Assembly: GCA_964188305.1 (NCBI GenBank)
Contig: OZ076894.1
Source of the DNA: Podarcis bocagei
Taxonomy: Eukaryota
DNA length: 64,000 nucleotides
Reading direction: 5' to 3' (one strand)
In this document: positions 10,330-48,717 of the stretch, piece after piece
Layout: each line of letters opens with the position of its first letter
Numbering within the stretch: position 1 is the first letter of the stretch
Position numbers and translations under genes: made by a program
Notes under the pieces: model-generated
The model's database searches: none
The model's input: the letters and a program-made list of their open reading frames with translations, nothing else
Told to the model about the DNA's origin: nothing

Positions 10330-10840
10330 CAGGGGTCGGCAAACTAAGGTCAGCGGGCCGGTTCAGGCCCAATTGCCTTCAGGATCCGGCCCACAGACTG
10401 CCCGTGGATCAGCATGGGGATTCTGCCCCATTTTTTCCTGCGCCATTCTGTCCCCTCCCACACCGCTGTGGCGCCTCCTCCCTCCCTCCTCCTGGCTTCT
10501 CCCCATCCTGCCTAGAGGAGGAAGGGGGCTGGCCTGGCCTGGCTGAACACCATTTTAAGCAGCCCCTCTCCAGAGCCAGCCCTTTCGCTCCACTCATCTT
10601 CCTGCCCCTGCCCTGGTGCTCCTGTGGGCCAGAGAGCGGAGCGGACGAGCTCATTCTGCCTACCCCTGAGAAGCAGCAGCCCCAGGGAAGGTAAGCACAG
10701 TGGCTGGGGGTGGGGAGGAGGACTACTTGCCCCCCTCACCTCTTTTTTCAGCTCCCCCCCCCAGTCCCGCTTCTCCGGCCCGCCACAAGGTCTGAGGGAC
10801 AGTGGACTGGTCCGCAGCTAAAAAATTTTGCCGACCCCTG
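10330..10840. mobile_element. Non-autonomous hAT (Charlie/Buster group) with GC-rich interior
   Basis: 14-bp TIR CAGGGGTCGGCAAA; perfect TSD ttctagtc (10322-10329, 10841-10848). Subterminal sequence shared, in inverted orientation, with the copies at 15520 and 32155. Confidence 0.93.
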
Positions 10841-11982
10841 TTCTAGTCAGTCATCCACGATCCCCTATATCTTCTGTGCTGTTGCAATGTCTAATGAAGT
10901 TAAAGTTTAGATCACATGAGTAGGGTGAACCCGGTCTCTCAATGAATAGCTCAGACCTGGGGAACTTAATGAGTGCTGTACTACTGAGTGGACTGGCATC
11001 ACTTCAATGTCTCCTGGCCATTCTGCTAGTTGCTAGCAATTTTACATGGCAAATTTCAGAGATTCTAGTTTTGTAGAAGAGCAGAAAAAAATCCCGCATT
11101 TCACATTTTTTGAAGGACAAGTCTAGATGCTAAAAATTGAAAGACTCAAATTAAGTCTTCATCATCAAAGCACAAATGGAATTCTGTTATGTGGTTCTTC
11201 TAAAAACAAAATACTTAAAAGTTAGTAAGAAATCAACAATGTTTGACATTATTGGTCATGTTCAGGACAAGTTACCATACTTCATGGAGGAGGGCTTAAA
11301 GAATATGACTTGGCTCAGGCGGTGAAGGAAAAGAATAGAAGTCAGATTTTTTCATCACTTTAAAAGGTTCTAAACCTATGAAAATACTGGTTTAACTATC
11401 AATAAATATAGCTTGGTTGCTCTTGGAAAGAAGAATTCACTAAAACACCTATAAAAGTCTGTGACTTGTGTGTTGGGTATTCTAAGCAAATGCCTTGATT
11501 CCTTTGATCCTATATAATGTTCATGGCCGAGTCAAATGTGCAATGCTTCATTCAGTAGAATGCCCTCAAGGCAGCTTTATTTGATGGTAAGAGCTAATGA
11601 AGATCTGTGATTTGCTCTTCCCCTTTCTTTTGCTCCATGTTTCCTGTTAAGAATTAATTTATTTCTTGAGCCCGAGGATACTGAAGTCCCAGCATTGATC
11701 CTAAACTCAGCCAGCTATTCATTGGTAGATTCTAATAAGATCACTCAGTTCATTGTTTGTTTGGGTGTCACTTCACAAAAAGTGTCACTACACATATTGG
11801 CCTAATCTTATAAATGAAACTAGTTCAGGTGCTTTGGGATCTTAAATACAAAAATACACTAGTTAAGCCTTATGCTGAAAAATGTCACCTTGATTCTGGG
11901 TGCACTCCAGTCACGCACAGAGTTCCTATGTTTCCATAGAGAACTGTCTCCTCTTGAAGAAGATAGGGGAGTCTTGAATATA

Positions 11983-12208
11983 CAGTGGTACCTTGGGTTA
12001 AGTTCTTAATTCATTCCGGAGGTCTGTACTTAACCTGAAACTGTTCATAACCTGAAGCACTACTTTAGCTAATGGGGCCTCCTGCTGCTGCTGTGCTGCC
12101 AGAGCACGATTTCTGTTCTCATCCTGAAGCAAAGTTCTTAACCTGAAGCACTATTTCTGGGTTAGCGGAGTCTGTAACCTGAAGCGTATGTAACCCGAGG
12201 TACCACTG
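11983..12208. mobile_element. Tc1/mariner (Tigger-like) MITE
   Basis: TIR CAGTGGTACCTYGGGTTA, TA TSD; sister copy at 38354-38593. Confidence 0.9.
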
Positions 12209-13860
12209 TACCCTGAAGACTCCAATGTTCCTGCAGCAAATCTATGTGAGGGAAATAAAGCCAGAGGTAGAAAAGGCTTCCCAAAGACGTGTTTATAAGA
12301 TCTTCTTCTGCTTGTCCAATTTTAATTTGTAGATGACTTCTTGTATCTGAAACAGTATTTTAGAAGGGTTTGTACAACAGTAAAACCCATGTTGGGTGCA
12401 GGACAATTCTTCATTTTACAAACACAGGGATTGCTTTGCTGCTCTAAAATGTCAAGACCTATTTGACATACATATTTCCTCAGTCATGTTATTGATTCCT
12501 TATTGCAGTACTTTGCCATCCATATTTTTGATTTGCCTTAGTTTGCTGTAAATTGGTAGATGCACTGACCATGTAATGCTTCGATTGATTTTGTTGCATG
12601 TTGATTTACAGTGTGTTATACCGATCATGGCCTTTTTGGTTGCTTTTGAGAATAGCTTTCATGATGACTGGCCTGCATCTCCTTTCAGTAGCACTATTTC
12701 AGCACTGCTGAGTTCAGTGGTGCTACCCATGAGAAAAGAATTCATTCTGTTTGGTCTTAGTACCAGGGGTGTCACGGTAAGCCCCACTTCGCTCAATCAG
12801 TCACAAGAGTGGCAATGTTCATCAACTTTGGGGATCCCCAGCCCCCTCAAATATTTCATTAGGGAGGTTGAGGGGACCTTGGCCCTTAGGAGTTGGCTAC
12901 TATGCCTTAGATCCTATGTGTTTTAATCACTCATACTTCGAGAAGGAGGGAAAGGGACATGTATTTTCTGCAAGATGTTGTTAGAATGTATTTGCATGCA
13001 ATTGGAGTTGTTGTAATGTTGGCTAATATCTCTTAGCGCTGGGATAAAACTTATGCGTGTGTGTGCATATACACATACATGTGGCATATACACACGTCTT
13101 TAAGCACTAGTATTATAAACTCGAACAATTTCTAAAAGTATAGTAAAACAAAACTTACAACTGCTATTTAATATTTACATTAAGCAAGAAATAAAACTGT
13201 TTGAAGTGTAGGACAGTGACTTCACAATCTTTTTAATTTAAAACGTTTCTCCTTTATGAAATCTTTGGAATTATTCCTTATTCTCACGAGTCCAAGTTGT
13301 TACTGCATTTGCTTAAATTCAACCCTTGTTGACATTGTTCCTCCCACCTCCTTTTTCATATATGCCACTGTCAAAATTATGACAATATGCTTTTCAGGTG
13401 GGTTTTGCATCTTGAACCTTTGTGATGGCACAGATTTTTCTGCTGAAACATCTGAAACTATCCAATGACGCAGTACGCAACTATGTGTGCTTTAGTCCTA
13501 TAATTGCATAGTGATCTCTGAAATACACAGGCTCTCAATCACACACCCACACTCTCTATAGTCCTATTCATGCAACTGAATAAAACAAACATGAAGGAAG
13601 GTGTGGGATTGTGGTGACCTTTGCATGTTGGCTGTATCACCTGTACAGTCTTTATGCACTTGCTTTATGGGTAGGTGAAAGCCATGCAGAAACTAGGTAC
13701 CCAACTGCTCTGAAAAACCACGCTTGCCTGTGTGTACATTTCATACACACAGAGAAACTGTACAGTAAATACATATAGATGGGTATGGGACTTGCTGCCA
13801 AGATCTCGCTCCTGCATATGCATGTTTTCTGTATATACTTCCAATTTTGTGACCAGTACA

Positions 13861-13862
<2 letters not shown>

Positions 13863-13910
<48 letters not shown>
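13863..13910 (+). repeat. (TC)n microsatellite
   Basis: Directly visible. Confidence 0.95.
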
Positions 13911-13913
<3 letters not shown>

Positions 13914-14297
13914 TCCCCCCTGGCTTTCTCTCAGACACCTAACCAATGAAGATTTGTTGGTTATATATAAAGCCAATTATGAATGTCAGTGCCAGTCTAA
14001 TATATTTTTTTTAAACACAAAAGCTCATACCAATAACAAACTTAGTTGGTCTCTAAGGTGCTACTGGAAGGAATTTTTTTACATATTTTGTTTCGACCAC
14101 GGCAGACCAACACAGCTACCTACCTACCTACCTACCTACCTATATTTTTCTAAAGAAGTGCCAATTGGAGCAAACATGCCATTGAGCCACTAATTCATGT
14201 CTCCATCTATTCCATGCATTGCCTGAATCAGGTTGCTTTACACTGTTGCTTAGCAGGGCTGACTGTGACCCCACCCCCATCCCAGCCATCCCCTGTA

Positions 14298-15203
14298 CAG
14301 TGGTGCCTTCTTGCGAGTTTTTCGTCTTGCGATGCACAGTTTCCCATAGGAATGCATTGAAAATCAATTAATGCGTTCCTATGGAAACCGCCTTCAGACC
14401 AGGTCCGGGGACAGTCTGTCCCCCGACCTCTTCTGAAGGCTGGGGGGGGGGGGACAAGGGCTTTTCTTCCCACCGCCAGCCTTCAGAAGGCTGTTCTGAA
14501 GGCTGGCGGTGGGAAGAAAAGCCCTTCTCCCCACCTCTCGCCCCGCAAGCTCCGGGGACAGGAGCGCTTTGCTGCCAACCGCCAGCATTTTAAAAGCCCC
14601 CGCTGTCCCGGGGCGATTTTAAAATGCTGGGGGTCGGCAGCGAAGGCTTCGCTGCCGCCCGCCAGCATTTTAAGATCGCCCGGGACAGCGGAGAAGTCTC
14701 CGCTGTCCCGGGAAGGCAGGCGGGGGGAGCAAAGACTTTTGCCCCCCGCCGGCCTTCAGAAGAGGTCCAGTCTTCCCCCCCCTGCCTGCCTTCCAAAGCC
14801 GTCCGGGACAGCGGAGAAACGCGCTGCCTTTCTCCGCTCTCCCGGGAAGGCAGGCGGGGGGGAGCAAAGACTTTTGCCCCCCGCCCGCCTTCAAAAGCCG
14901 TCCGCGATAGCGGGAAGTGCTTCCCGCTATCCCGGACTGCTTTTAAAATGCTGGCGGTGGGGAGCAAAGCCTTTCGGCCCCCGCCGGCCTTCCTGGACCT
15001 CTTCTGAAGGCCGGAGGGGGGGAAAGGCTTTGCTCCCCACCACCAGCATTTAAAAGAGGTCCCCGGAGATTTCCCTATGGGCTTTCGTCTTGCGAAGCAA
15101 GCCCATAGGGAAATTCGTCTTGCGAAGCACCTCCAAAACAGAAAACCCTTTCGTCTTGCGGGTTTTCCGTCTTGCGAGGCATTCGTCTTGCGAGGTACCA
15201 CTG
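14298..15203. mobile_element. Non-autonomous Tc1/mariner (Tigger-like) element with GC-rich internally repeated interior; left TIR partly deleted
   Basis: TA-CAGTGGTGCCT...GAGGTACCACTG-TA with subterminal TCTTGCGA repeats; ends homologous to the 15731-16147 element, in inverted orientation. Confidence 0.88.
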
Positions 15204-15519
15204 TATTGCCACAGTGACTGGCCCCATGTCTAACTCTACTTTTTGCAGAAAGTTTGGTAATGGCACAGTCTTAAGGACAAAATGAAGGAAGCAAATGCAC
15301 CCTTAAATCATTTGGTAGCCCCCAATAGACCATTTAAAAAGCCCTTTACCCATCATTTGCAGTAGGCTGTTGTATCAGGTTTCATTCTCCTTTCTAGTTA
15401 CTGTAAGGATAAGATGGGAACTTGCACAGCCATACAAAATGGAGTGAAAATTAGGCAGTTAGCAGTATACTATTCTATCATGAAACTGTTTGAGTCTTTG
15501 AATTTTTAGCATGCAGGTA

Positions 15520-16252
15520 CAGGAGTCAGCAAACTTTTTCAGCAGGGGGCTGGTCCACTGTCCCTCAGACCTTGTGGGGGGCAGGACTATATTTTGAAAA
15601 AGAAAAAAAATGAACGAATCCCTATGCCCCACAAATAACCCAGAGATGCATTTTAAATAAAAGCACACATTCTACTTATTTAAAAACACCAGGCAGGCCC
15701 CACAAATAACCCAGAGATGCATTTTAAATACAGTGGTGCCCCGCAAGACGAATGCCTCGCAAGACGGAAAACCCGCTAGACGAAAGGGTTTTCCATTTTT
15801 GAGCTGCTTCGCAAGACAATTTTCCCTATGGGCTTGCTTTGCAAGATGAAAACGTCTTGCAAGTGTTCCAATTTTTCCCCGCTTTCCCCCCTTTTTCTAA
15901 GCCGCTAAGCCGCTAATAGCCTTTTAGCCGCTAATCCGCTAAGCCTTTAATAGCCGCTAATAGCCTTTTAGCCGCTAATCCGCTAAGCCTTTAATAGCCG
16001 CTAAGCCTTTAATAGCCGCTAAGCCTTTAATAGCCGCTAAACCGCTAATAGCGCTAAGCCGCTAATAGGGTTGCTTCGCAAGATGAAAAAACCGCTAGAC
16101 GAATGGGCTCGCGGAACGGATTAATTTCGTCTTGCGAGGCACCACTGTAAAAGGACACATTCTACTCATGTAAAATCACGCTGATTCCCAGACTGTACAC
16201 GGGCCGGATAAAGAAGGTGTTTGGCCCCCGGGCCTTTGTTTGTTTACCCATG
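15520..16252. mobile_element. Non-autonomous hAT (same family as 32155-32478) interrupted by a Tc1/mariner element
   Basis: Colinear with the uninterrupted copy at 32155 on both sides of the insertion, including the duplicated ccccacaaataacccagagatgcattttaaata unit. Confidence 0.85.
15731..16147. mobile_element. Tc1/mariner non-autonomous element with internal AGCCGCTA/AGCCTTTAAT minisatellite (about 15898-16066)
   Basis: TIR CAGTGGTGCCYCGCAAGACGAA. TA duplication confirmed by the empty site aaaTAaaagg in the 32155 copy of the host element. Confidence 0.92.
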
Positions 16253-17204
16253 ATGTAGGAGATCCTTTGGTGCCTCAATATGCAGCTTTAAGTGCTAGGT
16301 GAAAGTGTTCCTCTTCAACCAAGCCTTTGGCTAACATCCTATATCATTTTAAATGTTTCATGGGAGAGGGTGGAAGGGGTTATTATTGTTTCATTTTCTT
16401 CTTCTTTTTATTAGGTCTTTTGTGTTTTTATCTTGTATTGTTATGCTGTGAACCCCCCTGAGAAATGCAGATGAAGGGTGGTATACAACTTTTAACAACA
16501 ACTACGACAACAACAATAATAATACTGAGAAGTTCCCCTCTGCATGTCCCACTGAAATGAAAGGGAATTGTGAAAGCCTGTGTTCCTGCTGCACTGTTCC
16601 TGTTAATTTTGATGTGCTATATTTTCCAGTAGACTGTGTCCAATAACCAGCGCAAGCCCAATATATTTTGTCACCTTAAGCAAAATACAAGATGCCACCA
16701 CCCTTTATTCCATGTTCAAAAGCTGGCCAGACTGGGCAGTTTGGGGCAGAATCTGCCATTGTACCTTAAGGGCAGCAGGTTAGCAGTGATATCCACTTTC
16801 TACCCTCAGCATTTGCCCCCTGAGGTGGATGCCTCATTCTGCCTCATGGTGGTAAATGGCCATTGTTCTTCTTACTCAGCCACCATTGTTCTACAAACTT
16901 GCTGGAGGGCTGTACCTTATCAAGTGTTCTCTTTTCTTAATAGAAGAAAACTTAGCCCAGCTTTCTCTCCCGTGGACGCAAAGATGTCTTTAGATATTTG
17001 TTTAATCATATCATAGTATTAAAAGGGCACGCTGAGGACACACTGCACTACATTTAGCACACAACTTTTTCAGTGACTGAAAAGTGTTCTTTAGTGTAGT
17101 GTCATAGAGACATTTACCGGATAGCTAATTGAAGGAACGAAACGTTATTTGACGGTTGTGGAGTGTGGATCTAGATTTATAAACTTTTGCCACATATTGT
17201 GGGA

Positions 17205-24900: not shown

Positions 24901-26217
24901 GACTAATCCAGCCCATGCACTTCCATGTTAGAAAGGCAATGTGTGAACTAAGTCTGAACAAATGTTGGTGGCTTGTGACTCAGTGGCCCAGTTCATATGA
25001 GGATTCATAAACCATGTTTATGAAGTGAGGAATAAGCTTTGGGGACAAGCACTTCTCCCTTGCCTTTCCTCTTCTCTGCTCCCACTGTATGTCGGGTTGG
25101 CACATAGATCCTGGCTTGTGTGAAGCCAGATTTGGCTGTTACAGTGGAATTTGAGAGCTCTAGCTTAAAGTCTGGTAACAAACCAGGCAATGGGATAGGA
25201 AGGATGAGGACCACCTGGCCCCGGTCCTTGTTTATGACTTCATTGTTTTTGAATGGTTTCCCAAACTAGGCTCATTTGGATATGTTCTGAAGATTCAGTC
25301 AAATGTTTCTTGTTGCATTTTATTAGGTAATGCTTCCCACAGCAATAAAGCAGATGTGCAAACACTTGCCTGCACCAAAGAAATTAAGCACATTGCAATT
25401 TGCTTTGCCAGCAAAGCATATGTATGATGTGTCTTCTTTTGATGTCTTGTCGAACGGCTGAGAATTTGGACTCCTCAGAAAAGGGAGGTATTTCAAGTGT
25501 AGCCAAGGTGACAGCCTCCAGATTTCGTAGAGACTGCAGTCGACACTGTCCCTCACCACTAGCCATGCTGGCTGGGTCTGATGAAAGTTATGGTTCAGCA
25601 ACTTCTGGAAAGCACATGTTAGTTACCCCCACATTGAAACAATATTTAATACAACTTTTTGATTCCTTTATTGATGCTTCAACATTCAGCAACAATTGAA
25701 ACGGAGCTTCCGCAGCAGTAGTATTTCTACAATTAGAATACTGCATTTTAGAATGGTCAGCATTTTAAAATTGTATATTTGGTGCTCATACCTAAATGTG
25801 GTATTCATATTTTCCTCCATATACTGCTGTTAACGTGCAGCACAGTAACCAGTATTAATTTTTATTCTCCTTTTTGAGTGCAAGAGATAACACAAGTTGC
25901 CTTAAAACGAGGGAGATGAAAATAAATGCAGAATGGAGAAAGAGATGTTATATTTCATTATGATCTGGAAAACTAAAGATACATGCTGTCTACCATGCTG
26001 AGCCACATGCTGAGAGCAGCAGTGATCTGTTTTTCAAGACATGCTAATCTCTATCCTGGGAAGCCTTTGGCCAGAATATGATCCTTAACCTTTACCGCTT
26101 GTAGTTTGTCATTATGATAGTCCAAGTTCCTTGATCTGGAATATGTATCTACACATCTTATAGTAAAACATTGAATAAAGCCCTTGAACTCAGTTGTGCA
26201 TGAGGAGGTGTCTAGCT

Positions 26218-26704
26218 CAGTGTTTCCCAACCTTTTTTGGGCAAAGGCACACTTGTTTGATGAAAAAAATCTTGAGGCACACCACCATTACAGCCCCGTG
26301 ACGTCAGCGCGCAGCGTCACGCCGGGAGGGACGCACGAAAGTGTAAGTTTCAATTGTTTTCCCTCCCCCTTGCCGGGGAACCTCCAAGCTTTGGGGGTGG
26401 GGGGGGGAGGAGGCAGCAAAGCGAGGCAGGAAGGAGAGCGCGGCTTGGCTGGGTGAGCTTTGGCAGGGGCAGGGAATGAGAGCCGCGAGGCGGGCACTGC
26501 GGACGGAGGCGCTGCCCACCGAGCTCGCAGGCAGCCAGGCAGCCAGACGGCGAGAGCCCCGTGCTGGGCAGCCTCTCCTCGCCGCCGCCGCCCCGCCTCT
26601 CGCCGCCCGACTCGCCCGCCTCCCTCCAGGCAACATCTCGCGGCACACCAGGCAACATCTCGCGGCACACTAGTGTGCCGCGGAACAGTGGTTGGGAAAC
26701 ACTG
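26218..26704. mobile_element. Young non-autonomous hAT, 487 bp, with unique GC-rich interior 26427-26575
   Basis: TIR CAGTGTTTCCCAACC; perfect TSD gtctagct; ends shared with 36861-37600; CpGs retained. Confidence 0.95.
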
Positions 26705-28419
26705 GTCTAGCTAACAGATGCACAGTGCAAAGGTCTTTCATCTTTTCCTATGTGAGAAAGATTTTTACCACATTTGTTACACAGGTGCTACCTGTTTCAA
26801 AAGCTGTACAAAGCCTGGCATTAATTCAGTGTGTGCCTCTTTGAGAAGTTAAGAAAAGAACTGTATGAAGGTTACCAAAACCTCTAGCCAAAGCATTCAA
26901 TAAGTGAAAAAAGCTCCCACCTCCATTGCTTCCTGACATGTTGCCCCCTTAAGGTTATTATGTCACAGTGCTGATGTGAGATGTCAGTGCAGGAGTCACG
27001 TGCTCTACTTCCTTGCCTGGTCTGTCTGTACTAAAAGTGGACACTGTGAAGGCAGGTGTGGTGGTGTGGCATTGGCAGCAAAGCAGGGCAGCTCTTACTG
27101 AACTTGTTGATAGAGAGACTATAGTTATGGAATTCCATTGTATTTGATGGTCTATATTTATGTTCCTAGTTTTAGAGATGGTTTAGCATTCTTTCACTTG
27201 TTCAACCATGCACAGCTTGCATTTTCTAGATCCAAACAAATAGCTTCATATCACTGAGTTCATGTTGATAGTGAAACAAAAGTTTTATGTATTAACAAGG
27301 TTCACTAGGTACCTTTGGGTTTAGTGAAATGCACCTGCCAAATACTCCTACCTATAGCTGAAATGAGCACACAGCTTATACAGTGTATGCAGTTCATGTT
27401 GAGTCAATAATATAAGCACATATACCAGAAGCACCCCTGCTGAAAAATACACATGGCCTTATGCTTCTCGTGCTAATACCAACATCAGCTTAAGACATCA
27501 TCTGTCCATCCTAAATCTTTCCCCCCACCTTGTTTCTTGTGCCAACCTGGGCTGCTGTCACCTCTTTCCTTCCATTCATGCATTATACAGGAAATAAATT
27601 CCATGCTGTTTCCTCCAGTGGTAGAATATAATGGTAGGAATTTGACTCTTCTGTTGAGTTGTGGGACAGCTTTGCATGGAACTGGGAAGTGTCACAACTG
27701 GGAAGTGCAGTTGTGTTTTCTTTCTCTTTTATCCACTCCTGAAATTTGCACGTTTTCTCCATGGATGCATGTGGATGCTTGCTATCAATGTTCAGCCAGC
27801 TCATGTACCTCTCCTCGCAAGAGATATGTAAGTTACATGAGAATTATATCTGTAATATGTAAAGCTGCTCATAAAAGCCTCCTTCATGTTATCCACATGT
27901 AGAGGGCTCCTTCCATGAAGGAGAACAGGATTGCACTACTGACCATGTTCTGATGTTGCATGCTTCCCCAACGCCAACAATGATACATTGTCTTGGGAGA
28001 GTCTCAAAATCCATTCTTACTGTTGGTAATCATATTTTTCTATGAGGGGGGAGTAAGGCATGAACTTCATGGACAGATCACAGCTGTTCAAGCAGTCCAG
28101 TCATGTATACATTGTCATCTGCTGCAGAGACAAGAGGAGAGACAAAGAGGAGAGACATACTGACCTGCTGTTGGGTATCTACAGTGCATGTTCACTTTCT
28201 CTGTTCCCCTGGGTGTGCATTTATTTTTTTCCAGCTGAAAATAATCCTGCATTAATTCCTCCTCTAGCAAAAGTTTTTACTAAAGCTGTCAGCATTGTTG
28301 CTTGAGAAGGGGTTTCATGGTTTGGCTCAGAATCAAACCCGTGTTTCTCATCTATTTTCTTATTAGAATCTTGGCATATTTATAAGCTGTGTGTGACATA
28401 TATATATATATATATATAT

Positions 28420-28694
28420 GCTTTCGTAGATTTTCACGGGTACAGGAATGCAGGTTTTGGTGTCTACGGGTGTCTTCCCGTGTAAGAGTTGGGGTGTCTA
28501 GGCGACGTTTCGACGAGGTCTCACTCGTCATCTTCAGGCTGGTGCTTTCGGCTTCTTGTTACTAGAACAGAGCCCTCTGTTCTAGTAACAAGAAGCCGAA
28601 AGCACCAGCCTGAAGATGACGAGTGAGACCTCGTCAAAACGTCGCCTAGACACCCCAACTCTTACACGGGAAGACACCCGTAGACACCAAAACC

Positions 28695-28699
<5 letters not shown>
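28420..28699. mobile_element. Penelope-like retroelement pLTR fragment in inverted (palindromic) arrangement, inserted in (TA)n
   Basis: 125-bp arms 28448-28572 and 28575-28699 with one mismatch; hammerhead core; minus-strand end ...ccgtgaaaatctacgaaagc resembles PLE termini; (TA)n on both sides. Confidence 0.8.
28504..28537 (-). ncRNA. Minimal hammerhead ribozyme core (Penelope type), core intact on the minus strand
   Basis: CTGAAGA-T-GACGAG(tgagac)CTCGTC-GAAA-C-GTC; stem II is a perfect 6 bp, stem I is weak. Confidence 0.6.
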
Positions 28700-32154: not shown

Positions 32155-32478
32155 CAGGGGTCAGCAACCCTTTCCAGACATGGGCTGGTCCACTATCCCT
32201 CAGACCTTGTGAGGGGCTGGACTATTTTTCGGGGGGGGGGGGAATGAACGAATTCCTATGCTCCACAAATAACCCAGAGATGCATTTTAAATAGAAGCAC
32301 ACATCCTACTCATGTAAAAACACCAGGCAGGCCCCACAAATAAGCCAGAGATGCATTTTAAATAAAAGGACACATTCTACTCATGTAGAAACACACTGAT
32401 TCCCAGACCGTCCGCAGGCCGGATTTGGAAGGTGATTGGGCCAGATCCAGCCCCCAGGCCTCGGGTTGCCTACCCCTG
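32155..32478. mobile_element. Non-autonomous hAT (Charlie/Buster group), uninterrupted AT-rich version
   Basis: Ends caggggtcagcaacc...ggttgcctacccctg; TSD agatagaa/agatagac. Confidence 0.88.
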
Positions 32479-35400: not shown

Positions 35401-36860
35401 TGGATGTCTGCATAAGTTTGTCCAAATTATTTCTGAATTGGATGGAATGAAGACATCCAAGGTATTTATGCTTGCTATAAAGTGGGAGTGCAATCCTAAA
35501 CCCTGAATCTGTGCTGCAAAGAGGAGCCTTCACTGGATTCCATCAAGCTCTGTCAGTCGGGAGGCTTCCATTGCTACAGAGGCCCCTTCTATACACAGCA
35601 GGGTGGGAAGCTACCTGGAGCTGATGCAGCTGAAGAAAGCCCTTCTCAAAAAACCACCTTCCCACCTGGCTAATAGGAGTGTCAGGATTTGGGATGTGTT
35701 CTGCCATTCCAATTTGCTCCACTGACCAGGTTTTAGGACCACTCCAGTACTTTCTTGCACATTACTGCTACCATAACCTTGCTCCCCGAGGAAGCAGGTG
35801 TTTATACCTTGTGACATTATCTTTAAAGGCTACAGGCAAGACTAAAACAAGGAAGAACTCAAATGAACTACAGTTTTACTCTTCTGCTTAGAAAAAATAA
35901 TAATCACATGAAATGAATATTTGCATTGAATTTTGAATTCTAGCATTGAAAATGATCAAAGTTCCAACAATGTGGACATGACTGAGAAAAGTTTTAGATC
36001 TGCAAATGTTCTTCAGCCATAAAACTAAGAAAAGCAATTCTCGAAATGGACAGTTTTGAGAACAAATGGAACCCATTTGTAAATATCCCTCTGGATAGAT
36101 ATTTAACTCAGAATTCAACAAATTTTAAAGGCTCAAATGCCTCTTGACTTCAAACACAATTAATTAATATTTGGATGTTTTCCTTTAGTTTAAGAAAAGG
36201 TCCCAGGGCTTCTAAACACCAGTCCATAAGAACAAACAAGGAGAAAACCAGGATAAAAATAAAACGAGCAGCAGGACCAATAAAAGACACACAAAGTGTT
36301 TGTTAAAACACCTAGGTAACATGCTGTTTATCACCAAATTAAAAGATCTGTACCTTGTGCAAAAAAGACATCAGGTTCTGCACCTGGCAAGTACCATATT
36401 TAGGGTACTGCAGTGGAAAAGCTTTTCTCTGGTCATTATCCACCTAACTTCAGGAAGACAGGGAGTCAGAAAAAGCATAATAACATTTAGTAGGTTCATA
36501 TGAGCAGTGGTAGTTCCTTAGACACCCAGGTCCCAAAACATTTAGGGCCTTAAGGTATCTGCACATTGAATTTACCTGGAAGCAGGCTGGTAACCAGTGT
36601 TGTTATTTTGAGAGCAAGCTGGTCCCAGCAGCTGTGTTGAGAACCAGTTGAAGTTTCCAAGAAGGGAAGGGCTGTAGTTAGTAGAGCTTATGAGTACAGC
36701 AGGTCTTAAATTCAATCCTCATCTCCAGGAGGATCAGGGAAAATATCTTTTCTGAAACTCTGGAGAACCACTACTAGTCAGTGTTGGCCATACTGAACTA
36801 CATGGACCAATTGCAGTTTGCTGTGTTCCTAAACTTCACATGCACTGCAGTAGTCTAGCC

Positions 36861-37600
36861 CAGTGTTTCCCAACCTTTTTTGGGCAAAGGCACACTTGTT
36901 TGAGGAAAAAAATCTCGCGGCACACCACCATTACAGCCCCGTGACGTCAGCGTGCAGCGTCACGCCGGGAGGGACGCACGAAAGTGAAAGTTTTCAATTT
37001 TTTCCCCTCCCCCTTGCCGGGGAACCTCCAAGCTTTGGGGGTGGGGGGGGGGAGGAGGCAGCAAAGCGAGGGACTGAGGGACGGCGGCAGCTGAGGCGGC
37101 GGCGGCTGTTGTTGTGGTGGCGGCGATAGCGGGCGGAGGAGGGGGTGGTGGCGGGGCCGAGGTGGCCGGCGGCGGCGGGGGAGGCGGCGGCGGGTGGAGC
37201 AGGAGGGTGGCCGAGGCTGGTGAGGGAGTAGGGTTGCCCGGGGCTTGAGGAGCCGTCGCCGGGAGTTGCTGCTGCTGCTGTTGCTGCTGCTGCCCGGACA
37301 TGCCGGCCTCCTCCTCGTCCGCTGTCTCGCGCTCCTCCCTTTTGCACGCGCTGCCCCGCCGCCGCCCCATTGGCTGGGTCCTGTCAGCTGAACCTGTGTT
37401 ATTTCCTGTGTGTGTGTGTGAGGGGAGAATGGAGAGAGAAACCTCGGCACCACCACCGCGGAGCCGCCCCCGGCTCGACGCGGATCCTCGCCGCCGCCGC
37501 CGCCTCTCACCGCCCGACTCGCCCGCCTCCCTCCCACGGCACACCAGCCAACTTCTCACGGCACACTAGTGTGCTGCGGAACACCGGTTGGGAAACACTG
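36861..37600. mobile_element. Young non-autonomous hAT, 740 bp, carrying captured CpG-island cargo (37072-37484)
   Basis: TIR CAGTGTTTCCCAACC; perfect TSD gtctagcc (36853-36860, 37601-37608); about 210 bp of left end and 110 bp of right end shared with 26218-26704. Confidence 0.95.
37077..37301 (-). pseudogene. Transposon-captured fragment resembling the RANBP9 (RanBPM) exon 1 N-terminus, first ~75 codons
   Basis: gccggcATG then MSGQQQQQQQQQLPATAPQ...ATLLLHPPPPPPPPPATSAPPPPPPPP, versus recalled human RANBP9 MSGQPPPPPPQQQQQQQQL...AALLLHPPPPPPPATAAPPPPPPPP. Low complexity and not searched. Confidence 0.65.
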
Positions 37601-37776
37601 GTCTAGCCTGGTGGTTATCAGGGCAAGGATCACCTATAGAGGTTATCTCTGCTCTGGAGAGGCCACAGCTGGTATAACAGCTGTATCTGGTGAAGGTTTC
37701 ATGGATGACACTTAGATTGATCTGGGTAACCAGAGGTCTATTAGCATGTGCAGACTGTGAGCCTGGCACTTTAGGA

Positions 37777-37873: not shown

Positions 37874-38353
37874 CTTTAAGATGGGTGTCTACCCATCCAG
37901 TATAGAATGAAAACCTCCACCCAGATTAGACAAACCACCCCATTAGCAATATTGCTGTTTTCAGATTGAGCTTCATTTTATTTGTCCTCATCAAGTCCTT
38001 TACTGATCCAAAGCACCATTTCTGTGCTTCCACTCCCAAATCCCTGGATGACCTCACTCAGTGTGATGTGGAAGTTGTATAGCATGGAATACAAGATAGA
38101 CTCCTATCTAATGTAAATAGATAGTACAGTAGACTTTCAGGACAATCTCCTAGAATCAACCATCCAGGAACTATTGAAGCATAATGCCCAACCTCCAAGA
38201 ATCACATTCAGTAGTTTCTATGATCAATGACACCAAAGCTGAAGTGTCCAGAATAATTAGCAGGATTACATGAGATATCCACCAAGACAACCCAGCCAAG
38301 GCAGTTTTGATGTTGAACCCAGGCCTCGTGTCAGATTTGCATGGATCCAGATA

Positions 38354-38593
38354 CAGTGGTACCTCAGGTTACGAACTTAATTCATTCCAGAGGTCCGTTC
38401 TTAACCCAAAACCGTTCTTAATCTGAGGTGCGCTTACACTAATGGGGCCTCCCGCTGCCGCTGAGCTGCCGGCAAGCAATTTCCATTCTCATCTGGACCA
38501 AAGTTCTCAACCCTAGGTACTACTTCCAAGTTAGCGGAGTTTGTAACCCGAGGTGTTTGTAACCCGAATCATTTGTAACCTGAGGTACCACTG
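38354..38593. mobile_element. Tc1/mariner (Tigger-like) MITE
   Basis: TIR CAGTGGTACCTCAGGTTAC, TA TSD; homologous to 11983-12208. Confidence 0.9.
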
Positions 38594-39424
38594 TAATTGG
38601 TTTAATCTAATAGTGACTGGAGACAGCATATACAGTAATATATTTCCCCCATGCCTTTGTAGTATAAGAAGGTAGCAGTTGTTGGGAAACGTGTGCTTTA
38701 CAAGTCTTTGTATAAGTCATTTCATTTATTTTATTTTTCAAATATAATTTAGGTGGTTAGGACTTCCACTATAGTTTGTTTCTTGGCTAGCGAACGTGTG
38801 AGCACTGAGCATGCCTTTTTTTAAAAATAATAATAAAAAGATTGTTGAATAAAGCAAATGTTGGCCAGATTGTGCTGTTATTATGATTGCACACTGGAGA
38901 GTAGTAACTGTTTTATAAGTTACCTGCTAGTGTGGTAAAATGCATTTCCATTTATTTTGATGATGCTAATCTCTGTTTCCTCTGAGAGGGTTATTAAACA
39001 TAGGTAATTCAGTAGCTTTCATTACTTTGGCCTAAAGGAGAAGCTTTAGAAGCAGGAATGCTTTAAATGCAGTGGAGCCAGGAGCAAGGAAAGCGACTCT
39101 ATAATGGATTATGTAAGTGTGCCACAAAAGTAATCTGACTTGACTTCTCAGTCCTTGTTTCAGAAAGCAATCTGTATGACATATTTATACAGTGAATAAA
39201 TAAAATAAATTTCAAGGTCTTACTCTTGGCAAAGTGTAATGATTCAAGAACTTGCCTGAGGGGGTGGTATTTAAAGCAAAGGGGTGGCCCTAAGGATTGT
39301 GGGGCCACAAGAAGGATTTGTTTGTGGGAAGATGAGCGAGATTGCCAGCATAATAGTAAGGAAATTATCTGTGTTTGCCATAATTCCATCTACTTTCCCT
39401 GTCTGACAACCTGCTCCCCTGTTA

Positions 39425-39961: not shown

Positions 39962-40002
39962 CTCCCCTGTTATATGTATTATATGTCCCCTTAAATGAAA
40001 GA

Positions 40003-40005
<3 letters not shown>

Positions 40006-40051
<46 letters not shown>

Positions 40052-40598
40052 TTATTATTTATACCCCGCCCATCTGGCTGGGCCTCCCCAGCCACTCTGG
40101 GCGGCTTCCATAAAAACCAAAAATACAATAAAATATCACACGTTAAAAACTTCCCTGAACAGGGCTGCCTTAAGATGTCTCCTGAATGTCAGGTAGTTGT
40201 TTATCGCTTTGACATCTGCTGGAAGGGCGTTCCACAGGGCGGGCGCCACTACCGAGAAGGCCCTCTGCCTGGTTCCCTGTAGCTTTGCTTCTCGCAATGA
40301 GGGAACCGCCAGAAGGCCCTCGGCGCTGGACCTCAGCGTCCGGGCAGAATGATGGGGGTGGAGACGCTCCTTCAGGTATACTGGACCGAGGCCGTTTAGG
40401 GCTTTAAAGGTCAGCACCAACACTTTGAATTGTGCTCAGAAACATACTGGGAGCCAATGCAGGTCTTTCAAGACCGGTGTTATATGGTCTCGGCGGCCGC
40501 TCCCAGTCACCAGTCTAGCTGCCGCATTCTGGATTAGTTGTAGTTTCCGAGTCACCTTCAAAGGTAGCCCCACGTAGAGCGCATTGCAGTAGTCCAAG
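40006..40598 (-). mobile_element. Young L2-clade LINE, 5'-truncated, (TTA)n tail
   Basis: Encodes LDYCNALYVGLPLKVTRKLQLIQNAAARLV...ALFREVFNV, near-identical to 53440-53899. Confidence 0.92.
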
Positions 40599-41559
40599 CT
40601 CTTAGGTCCAGCAGTCCTTTCCACTGCTCTTCTTTATACTTCTTTGAATTTTGCAGGGCACTTGTCCAGCCTAGTAATGTATAGGGAAATGTATGCACAA
40701 GGGTAAAGTGTCCATGAAATACAATGCTATTTTTCAAGAAAAGAGCTGCCGGAACTCACCAGCAATGCCTCCATTGTTCTTTTATAATGACAATGGTGCC
40801 CACCTGAGAGGTGCTGGAACTGAGTTCCAGTGAGATCCAGCTGAACCCCCCCCCCCGATGAAATGCATGTATTAGTGAAAATATTATACAAATATGCATA
40901 TTATTTGGGAACATTGCTTTGTAAAAATGAGTATATTTGGCAAAATTGAACACCAATGTGCATACTAAGAGACAGCACTAAGATTCTGGTTAATTTTCAT
41001 GAGTTGTTTTTTTTAATCACAAACTGATGTGGAAATGTGGAGAACTGATGAGCAACCAAGAGAAATTGAATTTGACAGATTTGCCTTTCCTACTCCAGAA
41101 CACTCCAATAGATGCTTATTTAGTTCTTTTTTAAAAAATGGATTTGTAAACAACCCTAGGGAAATCCTACACGGAGGCAAAAGAAGAGAGGGCATTGTAA
41201 TGTGTGATTTATTAAAATGAGGCACGCCCTAATGGGGACAAATCTACAAAAGCAATAGGAATTATCTTATTTTTCACCTCTTAAATTTGTATTATTTTAG
41301 AATCCAGAACTTTATAGCAGTCACTGACTTATGCATACATTATTATTCCTGACCTTGCATTAAAGAATCAAAACTCTATAGGATGCTTTACAGATTTAAG
41401 CCACATATATCAACTTGGCTCCGTTAATTGTCACTGTAGCCATTTTGCTACATTATTTGCTAATCACCTCTGTCCTTTTAGCATTGCATTTTCTTCTTAC
41501 CTTATTCCTCTCCATCCTCACTCCTCAATGTGTGTATATAAGCCTGCAAATTTACGATG

Positions 41560-44403: not shown

Positions 44404-46225
44404 TTTAAAGTTAGACTTTACTGGAAAGTTTTCTAGTGCCTACTTTGCTGAGCTGACGTTCCAAGTTAAGGTAGCACCCTTAAGGTTTACCCAGCTTTTA
44501 GCAAACTATAAACTATTGAAAGTCATGGAAAAGCCATTATTTGCAAATCTGTTTTTGTTGTTATGCTGATAACCACAGAAATCACTGTGCAGCTATATTT
44601 GGCAAATATCAGGGTTGGTTGTTTTTGTTGTCCATTCCCCTCACTAAACTTACTTCCTTGCCATTGGCATGACATAACTGTCTTTTACTGTATCGGGTAT
44701 AATTTATTGCTGTCCTTATTCCATTTGCCGTTTTGCCTCTGCTACTATTTTCTTCTTGTAGGGCATAAAGGGGAAACAAAGGTTAGTTGTCTGTACAATA
44801 TATGTACTGTACTGTATACACAAATTTCCATAGTATTTGTAACAAGCAAAAATAAAGAGCTCTTCTGATAAAGGGAAAAATGCAGCAGGGAAAGCCAATT
44901 GAGATCCAGTTGTGATTTAATAAATAGCTCCCACTGTGTCTCATATCTTCAGCAGGGGAAATATTCAGCAGTTTAGATAGACATGAAATTGCAGCTCTTT
45001 CTAGCATTCCACTGCTAGAAGAGCTGCTCTATTTAAACGACTGAACAATTCCCCGTGACAAAGGCATCAAAATGGCCCAGGAATTAGTTATTAAATTCTG
45101 AGTGCACCTTCCTGGCTCTGTATGGGGCATTTTCCTACATGCTGTTGTAAGTCTTTACACCCTTCATATATGTTTGTGTTTATATGCATGTATATTTCAT
45201 TTATATCTTTGGGTCTGCTCTAACTCATCTGTCTGGTATACTGCTTCAGTTAATGCAAATCCACTGGAAAGATCAGGTCAAGTTGACTTCAGCATGTGAT
45301 GCTTGTGATTTGATAGAAACTTTTAGAACTGTTGAAGTACATGCATTCTCTGGAAGTGACAGTGTTTCTTTACATTAGTGGTACCATGTCAGCAGGATCT
45401 CTCTGAAGTACTTAGCAAAAGACAGCCTTGGGGGCATGTCTGTGCTGCAAGAAAATGGGCCTTTTAGTACATTGTTGATCATATCATTAAAAATGCAGTT
45501 GCAATGCATTGTTACTCTTTTGTGCTCCTATATAAGAACAACATCTGTTGTACAGATGGATTTTGCATGGACTTGCATTAGTTTCCATGCTCTTCATAGA
45601 GACTCATTCCTCTTCTAAAACAAACAAAATAAAACAAAACAAAACAAAAGGTTCTAAATTCATGCTCTGATTCCTTGCTTGACTGACAGTGAGAGAGGAA
45701 ACCTTGGAATCCAGAATTATTTCATTGGAAATCAGTAACAATCACTGAGGTTACCTGGTACTCATGGCAAGGGCACTCAGATTCTGAATGGAAATGGGGT
45801 GTAGTCAGAAATGAACTCCCTCCAGGTCAGAAAACCCATCATAAATTGAGCCCCAAAGCCTCCTGAAGTTTAGACCCAGCTCATACTGGCTTAATGCACC
45901 AACCCTTATCCCTGATTCTTCCCTTTTTGAAACTTATCCTGCTTGTGGGCACAGTGCACCTCTATACTACTCAGAATTAAGTCCTAATGAATTCAGTGGA
46001 GCTTTATTCCAGATAAATGGCTACAGGAGTGCAGCCTAAGTTATGAAAATTGCTCAGCAGTATTCTTTAAAAAATGAATCTATGTTTTACTGGGTTTATG
46101 GAAGAACCATCTTATCAAGGCCGGTCTTACTATTTGGTAGAGTGGGGTGGCCATATTAGGTAGCTGATTTTAAGTGGCATTCAAGAAACTAGTTAGCTAT
46201 TTATTATTATTGTTGTTGTGTGTAT

Positions 46226-46259
<34 letters not shown>

Positions 46260-47989
46260 CAAGGGAGGGGAAGAGGCACGTTTGAGATTTTCTGGTTCAG
46301 GTGCCAAAATACACTGACTAGCCTTAGGTACTACTGCAAATTGTTTGGTATTGAGAGGTGGGCATCATTTGCTGCTCTATCTCAGCCAGAAAAAAGTTTT
46401 GGGCTTTTACTGCATCTTAGAGAATGAAGAGAACTGCTGATGTTCTCTTCGTATTCCATTGGGTCTGCCCTGTTCCAAGCATATATCTCACAGCAGTCAC
46501 AGGGGAAAAAAGAGAAATAAATGTACGCTGTGTGGGTGGGTGAAACAAAGAGTGTCGCAGATCTCTTGCTAATATAAACGAGCTCATCTTCATTTATTTG
46601 CATTGAGAATCATTCTCTCCCCGAGATTATGTCTTTATGTGCCTTATGTGTTCTGTGTGTTCCAATATCAGAAAGCAGTATAACATTCCATCTTCTTCAA
46701 GGTGGGGGAATAAAATAGTCCAGATTCCTGACGATTCTGTCCCTCTGTATGTATCTTCAGCACCTACTTAAAATCTCTCACATAGAGAATTAATGCAAAC
46801 TGTGGATGCTTAAAGAGCAGCCCCAGATAAAAAGATAGCTTGATGGGATGTATAATTTGCTTCTGCCATTCCCAGTGTTAACAGCAGGGCATGGGTTGCC
46901 CTAGTATCTGTAGCTTCTTTGTTCATTTACAGAGGGCCTTGGCCACGGAACTGTGAGGCTTCCCTAATGCTTCCTTCCTTTTGTTGCACAGCTGAATCCT
47001 ATCAGTTGTGTAAGGCTTTGAATACCCACATAGGCGGCTGCCATTATCATGAAATGAAGAAGGGAAAATTCCATTTAAAAACTGGCCACAATCACTTGAC
47101 TTTACATTTTTTCCCCTGTAGCTTGTTTCATTGTTAGTTGAAGCTCTGTATTTCCATTGTGGTCTTTTCACTCATGCTTCAGAGCCAGAAGTGCAGGGTA
47201 CAGCTGGCTACAGACAACCTTGAAATCCTAAATAGGAGGAAGGGCAGCATAGGGCTATTTCAAATAAATGAATAAAATAGGGGGCAAGGGGTTGTAACAA
47301 ATGGCTTTCAATATGCTTTACTGACAGCTATGGAGCTGCAGGTGTGCAGCTGCAGGGGGAATTGCTGTCATTGGCACATCACTATTCTTTCCCATAAAAC
47401 ATCCAAAAGTGATTCACATTTTTTTTAAAAAAAAAAAATCAACAATAAAAGCTGATGTGAAACAATTTCAGGTTCAGTACAGATACAGGTATAGACTGAC
47501 ACAGATAAACTATGTACACCATTGTTTCTCACTGATTGCATGCAGAGAGGAGGCGGCAGAAGAAACCTGTGGAGTCTATGGCCCTCCATAGGGTGCTGGA
47601 TTCCAATTCTCATCATCTCATTGTGTGTTCTGGCTGGTGCTGATGAGAGCCAAAGTCCAACAGCCTCTGGTGGTCCACAGGTTCCACTCCTTGCAGCAGA
47701 GGAAGGGAGGCGGCTGGCACATTCAATGCACAGTGTTTTGTGGGGAGGTCCTGATGTCTGCTTACACATAAAGGGGCCCCTGGTACAATGAAAGGCATTA
47801 TCCTCTTCCTGCTCCCTTCTTATCAGAGACCTTGGAATTATATTTCCATAGCTGAATCAGAAAACAAAAGTTTTTTTTTATTTTTAAAAATCATTTTCCC
47901 CCAGAAAATTATCCGTAAAACATAAACTTATATCACAAGCCTGTAATTCCCATGTGATCAGCAGGGTTTACTCCCAGATAGTTATTACA

Positions 47990-48058
47990 AATAATAATAT
48001 TTGTACCTTGCTCATCTGACTGGGATTGCCCCAGCTGCTCTGGGCGGCTTCCAGCATA
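47990..48058 (-). mobile_element. L2 3'-end fragment; a similar stub lies at about 63244-63304
   Basis: Matches the 3' UTR of the young L2 copies (catctg...ccagc..ctctgggcggcttcca). Confidence 0.65.
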
Positions 48059-48165
48059 TATATATATATACATACACACATACATTAAACAAAGATAACT
48101 GCGCACAGGATTGTAATCTAAATTATGCAGTTCATAAACAGGAATCATAAAAGAACTCTTTAAGA

Positions 48166-48717
48166 CAGAGGTTTTCAACCAGTGTGCAATGCCACCCTGG
48201 GGTGCCTTGAATGATGGCCAGGGGTGCCACAGGCAACACTGGCCTCTGTCCCCCTTTCCTTCCCACCCTCCTCTAATGCCCTCTTGCATCTCTGCCTTCT
48301 AAAGGCTTCCACAGCTGTTTGTTGCTGCAGCCCTGCTGCCGCCACTGCTGCCTCCCTAGGTAAGGTGCTGGCCTCATGTTCACCTTTGGCCAGTCTCCGT
48401 TGGGCCACTAAGGCTGGGGGCATCCTCTGCCCAGATCCCTGTGGGGCAGTGTGAGGAGGCACCTCTTTTGGGGGCAGGAAGCAGCTCAAAGACCAGGGGT
48501 GGCAGCAGCGGCTGCCTGGAGGACTCCCAAGGAGAGGGGAGGAGAGGCGGCTGAGGGAACACTCCGCAAGGGACGGTGTTCGAAAAAGGGTGAGAGGCTG
48601 CAAGTTCTGCAGGCAAGGGGTGACATAGTAACAGGGCTCCTGAGCCCCACAGGGGTGCTGCAGAAAGATTGTAGTTGGTCAAATGAGCCGTGGACTCAAA
48701 AAGGTTGAAAACCTCTG
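48166..48717. mobile_element. Non-autonomous hAT with GC-rich interior
   Basis: Perfect 15-bp TIR CAGAGGTTTTCAACC; perfect TSD ctttaaga (48158-48165, 48718-48725). Confidence 0.93.

What the first reader, a model, noticed from the sequence alone, without database searches (positions are those of the whole stretch)
10330..48717. Recurring same-ends, different-GC-rich-middle architecture: a possible genome-wide CpG-island capture system in lizard DNA transposons
Seen in three families. hAT 26218 and 36861 have 149-bp and 413-bp unrelated interiors. hAT 10330 has a GC-rich interior while 15520 and 32155 have AT-rich interiors. Tc1/mariner 14298 has GC-rich repeats while 15731 has a minisatellite. 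A fourth hAT at 48166 also has a GC-rich interior. All sit in an AT-rich intron. Known: Pack-MULEs preferentially capture GC-rich 5' gene fragments, probably by template switching during gap repair. Inference: squamate non-autonomous TIR elements may routinely capture and disperse first-exon/promoter fragments, seeding mini CpG islands.
Basis: partly seen in the sequence, partly recalled or inferred. Interest (0 to 1): 0.8.

Follow-up and report, generated by a model that had tools for sequence, protein, structure and literature searches.

The report
Lizard transposons with swapped middles
Eight small transposase-less DNA transposons in this lizard intron do share ends while differing in their middles, but only one family carries a proven piece of a host gene (the start of RANBP9), so this is a known kind of gene-fragment capture and not a general CpG-island capture system.

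Summary
Three hAT families and two Tc1/mariner MITEs sit at the stated places with clean TIRs and TSDs. Related copies share termini but have unrelated interiors.

- hAT 36861-37600 carries the 5' end of RANBP9: ATG, about 75 codons and some upstream DNA. This was shown through a real RANBP9 exon-1 contig.
- Its sister 26218-26704 has a different 147-bp middle but keeps a 22-nt RANBP9-upstream trace, so it is probably a derivative, not a second capture.
- The GC-rich interior of hAT 10330 and the Tc 14298 repeats are family-level sequences, at roughly 10^3 and 10^3-10^4 genome equivalents. They are not private captures.
- hAT 10330 and hAT 48166 are CpG-poor and fail CpG-island criteria. Tc 14298 is a nest of palindromes.
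- CpGs in the two hAT-B copies mutate about 9 times faster than other sites, which suggests methylation rather than protected islands.

Same-ends/different-middle elements in lizards and Pack-TIRs in animals are already published. This scan has already noted RANBP9-, SIX5-, CDAN1- and SORCS2-carrying hATs elsewhere in this genome; I did not check those notes.

The parts
10330..10840 (-). hAT-A non-autonomous element, GC-rich-interior subfamily. The interior is 10411-10773. An internal TIR-like 12-mer lies at 10654-10668.
   Evidence: TIRs at 10330 and 10826-10840. The 8-bp TSD TTCTAGTC lies at 10322-10329 and 10841-10848. The arms align to 15520 and 32155. Interior summed depth is about 630-880 times the unique flank in three runs. 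CpG o/e of the interior is 0.23.
14298..15203 (.). Tc1/mariner MITE whose 661-bp GC-rich interior is made of nested palindromic units of about 40-100 bp.
   Evidence: TA TSDs at 14296-97 and 15204-05, and a CAGTGGTGCC TIR. Palindromes. Arm depth is 15-25 thousand times and interior depth 2-7 thousand times the unique flank. It meets CpG-island criteria over 14444-15110.
15520..16253 (+). hAT-A element of the AT-rich-interior subfamily, interrupted by the nested Tc MITE.
   Evidence: It aligns to 32155-32478 at 85% once 15731-16147 is removed. Depth is about 55-62 thousand times the unique flank.
15731..16147 (.). Tc1/mariner MITE with an 18/44-bp minisatellite interior, nested in hAT-A 15520.
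   Evidence: TA TSDs at 15729-30 and 16148-49. Tandem repeats. The joint 15728->16148, skipping 419 bp, appears in all four runs and represents hAT-A copies without this insertion. One 125-bp end is 91% like the end of Tc 14298.
26218..26704 (+). hAT-B non-autonomous element, short variant, with a 147-bp GC-rich middle at 26429-26575.
   Evidence: Perfect 15-bp TIRs. TSD GTCTAGCT. Alignment A1. The right arm holds the 22-nt RANBP9-upstream-like motif at 26603-26624.
32155..32478 (+). hAT-A element of the AT-rich-interior subfamily.
   Evidence: TIRs. TSD AGATAGAA/AGATAGAC. Interior GC is 41%.
36861..37600 (-). Pack-type hAT-B element. Its 413-bp middle (37072-37484) holds, on the minus strand, upstream DNA, the ATG (37301-37299) and about 75 codons of RANBP9.
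   Evidence: TIRs. TSD GTCTAGCC. The ORF matches P0001 at E 1.3e-11. P0001 is RANBP9 exon 1, E 1.1e-41 against 7nsc_A. Nucleotide identity is 74.6% over 228 bp to L001 and 89.7% over 175 bp to L002; the local score is 106-137 against a shuffle mean of 16.
48166..48717 (.). hAT-C non-autonomous element, a single copy in the window, with a GC-rich but CpG-poor interior of unknown origin.
   Evidence: Perfect 15-bp TIRs. TSD CTTTAAGA. GC 59% and CpG o/e 0.17. No Pfam match and no similarity to the other interiors.

Best explanation
The window holds ordinary non-autonomous cut-and-paste transposons from several established subfamilies. They keep the TIRs and subterminal sequences that a transposase supplied in trans needs.

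Their middles differ because, in the ancestor of each subfamily, the interior was replaced by filler DNA. The inferred routes are interrupted double-strand-gap repair or template switching, plus element-element recombination and internal repeat expansion. Each chimera then amplified as a unit.

In one lineage (hAT-B) the filler was the 5' end of the host gene RANBP9, which makes it a Pack-type hAT. The short hAT-B copy is most likely a later deletion-plus-filler derivative of that lineage.

The other GC-rich interiors are fixed family sequences of unknown or TE-internal origin, not fresh promoter captures. High CpG content reflects the youth of the copies. The CpGs are decaying as in methylated DNA.

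Shown: element structure, the RANBP9 origin, family-level abundance of the hAT-A and Tc interiors, and CpG hypermutability. Inferred: the repair mechanism, and which hAT-B variant derives from which.
For: - TIRs and TSDs are present for all eight elements.
- Arms are shared and middles unrelated.
- The RANBP9 origin of the 36861 middle is shown.
- A 22-nt exact motif in the right arm of both hAT-B copies also lies about 300 bp upstream of the RANBP9 ATG in L001. The longest exact match is 22-24 nt, against at most 16 in 200 dinucleotide shuffles.
- Interior depth is close to arm depth for hAT-A 10330, and in the thousands for the Tc interiors.
- The hAT-A interior holds an internal TIR-like 12-mer.
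- The Tc interiors are palindromes and a minisatellite.
- No transposase domains are found.
- In the hAT-B arms, 8 of 30 CpG sites changed (7 of them to TG or CA), against 8 of about 265 other sites.
- Literature: anole non-autonomous hAT and Mariner families are not deletion derivatives; they diversify by recombination and uptake of extraneous DNA (PMC3014272). Pack-TIRs arise by gap filling or template switching in animals (PMC8277862).
Against: - The sources of the hAT-A 10330, hAT-C and 26218 middles were not found, so an old host capture cannot be excluded for them.
- Two of these interiors contain AG|GTAAG donor-like sites.
- At about 10% copy divergence, CpG decay could have erased an original island in hAT-A 10330.
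- The RANBP9-like 22-mer in the hAT-B arm lies in the opposite orientation to the cargo, so the derivation order is uncertain.
- Summed contig depth is only a rough proxy for copy number; the tool itself warns of this.
- Copy number of hAT-B and hAT-C was not measured here.
Confidence: 0.7

Rival explanations
1. Lizard non-autonomous TIR elements of several superfamilies preferentially and repeatedly capture CpG-island promoters and first exons, and disperse them as functional mini CpG islands.
For: - The RANBP9 5' end lies inside hAT 36861.
- Contig L002 joins a RANBP9 5' fragment to a second promoter-like CpG-rich segment.
- Unchecked notes from this scan report hATs carrying the 5' ends of SIX5, CDAN1, SORCS2, a PKA regulatory subunit and CDK5R2, plus about 12 RANBP9 copies, in the same genome.
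- Exons are 3.2-fold over-represented among animal Pack-TIR cargo (PMC8277862).
Against: - In this window only one of four GC-rich interiors is host-derived.
- The hAT-A and Tc interiors are family-level repeats.
- Two interiors fail CpG-island criteria.
- CpGs decay about 9-fold faster than other sites.
- GC-rich middles stand out to a reader in AT-rich DNA, so ascertainment is biased.
- No Tc1/mariner capture is shown.
Confidence: 0.25
2. The interiors are leftovers of non-coding internal regions of the autonomous parent elements. That would make these elements simple deletion derivatives.
For: - The origin of the hAT-A 10330, hAT-C and Tc interiors is unknown.
- Interior abundance matches arm abundance for hAT-A 10330.
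- An internal TIR-like motif is present.
Against: - Ten interior ORFs give no transposase or other Pfam match.
- The 36861 middle is RANBP9.
- Anole hAT and Mariner non-autonomous families are reported not to be deletion derivatives (PMC3014272).
- No autonomous element was available here to compare.
Confidence: 0.12
3. The different middles are nested insertions of other transposons into one MITE backbone.
For: Nesting does occur here: Tc 15731-16147 sits inside hAT-A 15520 with a TA TSD, and empty-site contigs exist.
Against: - No TIRs or TSDs bound the 10330, 26218, 36861 or 48166 middles.
- These middles match no other repeat in the window.
- The hAT-A interior is not more abundant than its arms.
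Confidence: 0.05

Closest known systems
Pack-TIR elements of animals (Tan et al. 2021, PMC8277862), e.g. Xenopus hAT-N8_XT carrying the CAPSL 5'UTR
   Same: A transposase-less hAT with TIRs and an 8-bp TSD carries a few hundred bp from a host gene's 5' end. Template switching or gap filling is the proposed origin.
   Different: That survey found 0 Pack-TIRs in its only lizard, anoCar2, working from just 77 consensus TIR TEs. It found only four multicopy cases among 370. The element here is in a lizard and, by unchecked scan notes, is multicopy.
Non-autonomous hAT/hobo and Mariner families of Anolis carolinensis (Novick et al. 2010, PMC3014272)
   Same: The ends are conserved and the central regions are unique to each family. 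The families are built by inter-element recombination and uptake of extraneous DNA, not by simple deletion.
   Different: The extraneous DNA reported there is mostly other TEs, in elements of 1.3-3.4 kb. No host gene 5' ends or GC/CpG bias are described.
Pack-MULEs of rice and maize
   Same: They capture GC-rich gene 5' fragments between conserved TIRs and then amplify.
   Different: They belong to a different superfamily (Mutator, 9-bp TSD, long TIRs) and to plants. Thousands of independent captures are documented there, against one verified here.
Maize Ds elements (Ac/Ds family, PMC3260210)
   Same: [quoted passage not shown]
   Different: They are plant elements, and many are Ac deletion derivatives.

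Membership tests
hAT superfamily, non-autonomous | 8-bp target-site duplication | tested here: met
   TTCTAGTC (10330), GTCTAGCT (26218), GTCTAGCC (36861), CTTTAAGA (48166), AGATAGAA/AGATAGAC (32155). The flank consensus of other hAT-A copies ends in TCTAGA (loose ends).
hAT superfamily, non-autonomous | Short TIRs beginning CAG | tested here: met
   15-bp TIRs are perfect in hAT-B and hAT-C and have 1-2 mismatches in hAT-A.
hAT superfamily, non-autonomous | No transposase of its own; mobilised by an autonomous hAT with matching ends | tested here: inconclusive
   No Pfam domain appears in the interior ORFs. The autonomous partner was not available to these tools.
Tc1/mariner MITE | TA target-site duplication and TIRs ending CAGTG | tested here: met
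   TA flanks both 14298-15203 and 15731-16147. The 419-bp empty-site joint equals 417 bp plus TA.
Pack-TIR / Pack-hAT | The interior is host, non-TE sequence with a parent locus that lacks the TIRs | tested here: met
   This holds for 36861 only. The middle matches RANBP9 exon 1 on contig L001, which runs on into the SPRY-domain coding region and a splice donor and has no hAT-B termini. The parent came from another squamate. The parent in this genome was not retrievable.
Pack-TIR / Pack-hAT | The same criterion applied to the 10330, 26218, 48166 and 14298 interiors | tested here: inconclusive
   No source was found: Pfam, similarity to the two fetched contigs (L001, L002) and between interiors, and the only public contig scan, run with the hAT-B TIR, all came back empty. 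No lizard genome search tool was on hand.
CpG island (Gardiner-Garden criteria) | At least 200 bp, GC at least 50%, CpG o/e at least 0.6 | tested here: met
   The criteria are met by 14444-15110, 26169-26812 and 36810-37694. They are NOT met by hAT-A 10330 or hAT-C 48166.
CpG island (functional) | Unmethylated in the germline | not testable with these tools
   Indirect evidence only: CpG sites differ between the two hAT-B copies about 9 times more often than other sites, which is typical of methylated DNA.

The most novel reading that the evidence does not exclude
Wall-lizard-type genomes may host an active hAT lineage that repeatedly picks up CpG-island gene starts (RANBP9 here; SIX5, CDAN1, SORCS2 and others by unchecked scan notes) and amplifies them to tens or hundreds of copies. 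That would be a vertebrate counterpart of plant Pack-MULEs, with a real bias towards promoters and first exons.
Probability: 0.3. Interest if true: 0.65.

Novelty: new member of a known kind. Interest (0 to 1): 0.4.

Why it matters
Multicopy gene-fragment-carrying DNA transposons are rare in vertebrates: four cases among 370 Pack-TIRs in the one animal-wide survey, which in effect did not cover lizards. A lizard hAT that spread the RANBP9 start adds a clean example. Together with the scan's other notes it makes a testable question: do hATs in this genome favour CpG-island 5' ends? The multi-family 'system' proposed from this window is not supported. Most of the GC-rich middles are ordinary subfamily sequences, and the CpGs look methylated and decaying, so a regulatory role as seeded islands is unlikely without further data.

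Tried and rejected
- Protein word searches on hAT-B arm ORFs, meant to collect other copies, found nothing.
- The word search on the 199-aa ORF of 36861 found only P0001 and P0002. Low-complexity words filled the 8000-candidate limit.
- The full HMMER search with the same ORF returned only P0002 plus low-complexity hits, so no closer RANBP9 parent was obtained.
- phmmer of the 80-aa cargo ORF against PDB missed RanBP9 because of composition bias. BLASTP with composition adjustment scored it poorly despite 30/40 identities at the N-terminus. The link therefore rests on the HMMER word-search hit, the nucleotide alignments and the chain from P0001 to 7nsc_A.
- Pfam on ten interior ORFs gave nothing.
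- Rfam over 9900-49000 gave only a SINE tRNA-like hit.
- A metagenome scan for the hAT-B terminus gave 0 matches.
- Similarity of the 26218 middle to the 10330 interior (score 20 against a shuffle maximum of 17) is a GC-rich low-complexity match, and I rejected it.
- A 21-nt match between the L002 junction and the antisense CCAAT region of the cargo is probably coincidence between polyPro-coding CCG repeats and upstream GGC repeats. I did not use it.
- Reads were laid on 10300-16299, so copy numbers of hAT-B and hAT-C were not measured.
- The N run at 52156-52648 was left alone.
Full report
**What is there**

The window is AT-rich (41% GC, CpG o/e 0.25). Its sharpest GC peaks coincide with small TIR-bounded elements. 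Reading the sequence and searching for the TIRs gives three hAT families and two Tc1/mariner MITEs.

- hAT-A has the TIR CAGGGGTCGGCAAAC. Copies lie at 10330-10840 (TSD TTCTAGTC), 15520-~16253 and 32155-32478 (TSD AGATAGAA/AGATAGAC).
- hAT-B has the TIR CAGTGTTTCCCAACC. Copies lie at 26218-26704 (TSD GTCTAGCT) and 36861-37600 (TSD GTCTAGCC).
- hAT-C has the TIR CAGAGGTTTTCAACC and lies at 48166-48717 (TSD CTTTAAGA).
- The Tc1/mariner MITEs, with TA TSDs, lie at 14298-15203 and 15731-16147. The second is nested inside hAT-A 15520.

All TIR matches exceed chance (0-1 expected). The flanks of other hAT-A copies in sequencing runs converge on TCTAGA. This explains why the hAT TSDs look alike (loose ends).

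**Checking 'same ends, different middles'**

The claim is confirmed, with qualifications.

- The two hAT-B copies align over about 211-228 bp on the left and about 116-135 bp on the right. In the aligned arm columns there are 7 mismatches in 209 and 8 in 116.
- Between those arms lie 147 bp in one copy and 413 bp in the other. These middles are no more alike than shuffled sequence (score 14 against a mean of 14).
- hAT-A 10330 is inverted relative to the other two copies. It shares only about 70-80 bp at each end, at 84% and about 72-75% identity. Its interior is 363 bp at 64% GC, against about 37-41% GC in the others.
- The two Tc elements share one 125-bp end (91%) and otherwise only the terminal about 14 bp and CGTCTTGCGA-type subterminal motifs.

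**The one proven capture**

On the minus strand, the 36861 middle reads as upstream DNA with a CCAAT motif, an ATG at 37301-37299, and an ORF starting MSGQ(Q)n...LLLHPPPP.

- A word search with this ORF returned two ORFs from public lizard-run contigs. P0001 scored E 1.3e-11.
- P0001 lies on a 2.2-kb contig, L001. It continues into ...[37 protein letters not shown]... and ends at a GT splice donor.
- P0001 matches human Ran-binding protein 9 (7nsc_A) at E 1.1e-41. L001 is therefore a genuine RANBP9 exon 1.
- At the DNA level the cargo matches L001 at 74.6% over 228 bp and the second contig, L002, at 89.7% over 175 bp. Local scores are 106 and 137 against a shuffle mean of 16.
- The cargo stops after about 75 codons, before the conserved SPRY-domain region.
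- I could not show that the 165 bp upstream of the ATG come from RANBP9. L001 is too divergent, and L002 ends 15 nt upstream of the ATG.

I tested that claim here and it holds.

**The sister copy 26218**

The 147-bp middle of 26218 has no detectable source.

The 'shared right arm' of both hAT-B copies contains a 22-nt motif, CCGCCCGACTCGCCCGCCTCCC. The same motif lies about 300 bp upstream of the RANBP9 ATG in L001. The longest exact matches of 22-24 nt compare with at most 16 in 200 dinucleotide shuffles.

So part of what the pairwise comparison labels 'arm' is probably RANBP9-derived as well. On that reading 26218 is a deletion-plus-filler derivative of the RANBP9-carrying lineage, not an independent capture into a common slot. 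The motif's orientation is opposite to that of the cargo, so this remains an inference.

**The other GC-rich middles**

I laid contigs of three deep DNA-like runs and one RNA-labelled run on 10300-16299 at 80% or greater likeness. I compared summed word depth with the unique flanks, which run at about 100, 21 and 100 in the three DNA-like runs.

| Stretch | Depth relative to unique flank |
|---|---|
| hAT-A 10330, arm-containing bins | about 1000x |
| hAT-A 10330, pure-interior bin 10500-10699 | about 630-880x |
| AT-rich hAT-A type (15520) | about 55-62 thousand x |
| Tc 14298 arms | 15-25 thousand x |
| Tc 14298 interior | 2-7 thousand x |
| Tc 15731 arm | about 37 thousand x |
| Tc 15731 minisatellite | about 16 thousand x |

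The tool warns that summed contig depth is not a copy number, so these figures are orders of magnitude only. They still show that these interiors are fixed parts of abundant subfamilies and not private captures. They also show that the hAT-A interior is not a fragment of some more abundant repeat.

Other details from the same call and related checks:
- Contigs that skip 15728->16148 (419 bp) appear in all four runs, which confirms the nested Tc insertion.
- Contigs of two related organisms bridge the right junction of 10330, so that insertion is shared with them.
- The 10330 interior contains a 12-nt exact copy of the hAT-A terminal repeat at 10654-10668. The extension is weakly arm-like (z about 3.3). 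This suggests element-element rearrangement.
- The Tc 14298 interior is a set of nested palindromes, unlike a promoter.
- Ten interior ORFs have no Pfam match.
- The sources of the 10330, 48166 and 26218 middles remain unknown.

**The CpG-island claim**

A 200-bp scan with standard criteria flags Tc 14298, both hAT-B copies and several other young repeats. It does not flag hAT-A 10330 or hAT-C.

CpG o/e is highest in the AT-richer Tc 15731 (1.25). It therefore follows the youth of a copy, not GC-rich cargo.

Between the two hAT-B copies, 22 CpG sites are intact in both and 8 in only one, 7 of those as TG or CA. That compares with 8 changes in about 265 other arm positions. This is roughly 9-fold CpG hypermutability, the signature of germline methylation. 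The numbers are small.

The family consensus of the 10330 interior had at least two more CpGs than this copy, at 10652/3 and 10667/8 (table 3). An older island that has since decayed cannot be excluded there.

**Mechanism**

Structure, mobility (TSDs, nesting, empty sites), host origin of one cargo and family-level abundance are shown. How the middles were acquired is inferred from established models:
- interrupted synthesis-dependent repair of the excision gap, with template switching;
- fork stalling and template switching followed by transposition (PMC8277862);
- inter-element recombination, as documented in the anole (PMC3014272).

**Comparison with what is known**

- Novick et al. already described anole non-autonomous hAT and Mariner families with conserved ends and family-specific centres that are not deletion derivatives.
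- Tan et al. catalogued 370 animal Pack-TIRs with exon enrichment, including a hAT carrying a 5'UTR. Their only lizard yielded none, from 77 consensus elements.
- No lizard Pack-hAT paper turned up in the held library.
- The architecture is therefore known, and the RANBP9-carrying hAT is a new member of a known kind.

**What the scan found before**

Notes on other parts of this genome report about 12 RANBP9-carrying hATs of 520-740 bp. They also report hATs carrying the 5' ends of SIX5, CDAN1, SORCS2, a PKA regulatory subunit and CDK5R2. I did not verify these. If they are right, the 36861 cargo is also a family-level sequence, from one capture that was then amplified. The wider idea of 5'-end-biased capture by hATs in this genome would then deserve a proper census.

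**Verdict**

- A multi-superfamily CpG-island capture system is not supported by this window.

Noticed in passing
window 10654-10668: The GC-rich interior of hAT-A 10330 contains a 12-nt exact copy of the hAT-A terminal repeat (CAGGGGTAGGCA, minus strand), with a weakly arm-like extension. This hints that the interior arose by rearrangement of two elements.
   Followed up: partly
L002:1-1751 (public run contig): A RANBP9 5' fragment (-15 to about +150) is joined to a different CpG-rich, promoter-like segment with a GTGAGT donor and then to AT-rich DNA. No hAT terminus appears within 1.6 kb. It may be part of a larger mosaic cargo element or an assembly chimera.
   Followed up: partly
window 11980-12210 and 38351-38595: A Tc1-like MITE (TIR TACAGTGGTACC...) has summed depth about 10^5 times the unique flank in three runs, making it the most abundant repeat in the stretch laid.
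   Followed up: no
window 28448-28699: A near-perfect palindrome with 125-nt arms (99% complementary, 2-nt spacer), flanked by (AT)n. Another note of the scan calls it Penelope-derived.
   Followed up: no
window 15520 (loose ends): The consensus of sequences flanking other hAT-A copies ends in TCTAGAG/TCTAGAC. This indicates a strong palindromic TCTAGA target preference, shared by the hAT-B and hAT-A TSDs seen here.
   Followed up: partly
window 40005-40599 and 53436-54030; 53281-53869 and 60393-60969: Copies of a repeat of about 600 bp with an (ATT)n tail, 95% alike in inverted orientation and 78-85% alike in direct orientation. It is probably a SINE or LINE tail family.
   Followed up: no
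window 10353-10677 (run X15): Contigs of a run guessed to be RNA cover the hAT-A 10330-type interior at about 85-90% identity. Copies of this subfamily may lie in transcribed regions, or the run may contain DNA.
   Followed up: no
window 52156-52648: A run of 493 N (assembly gap or masked).
   Followed up: no
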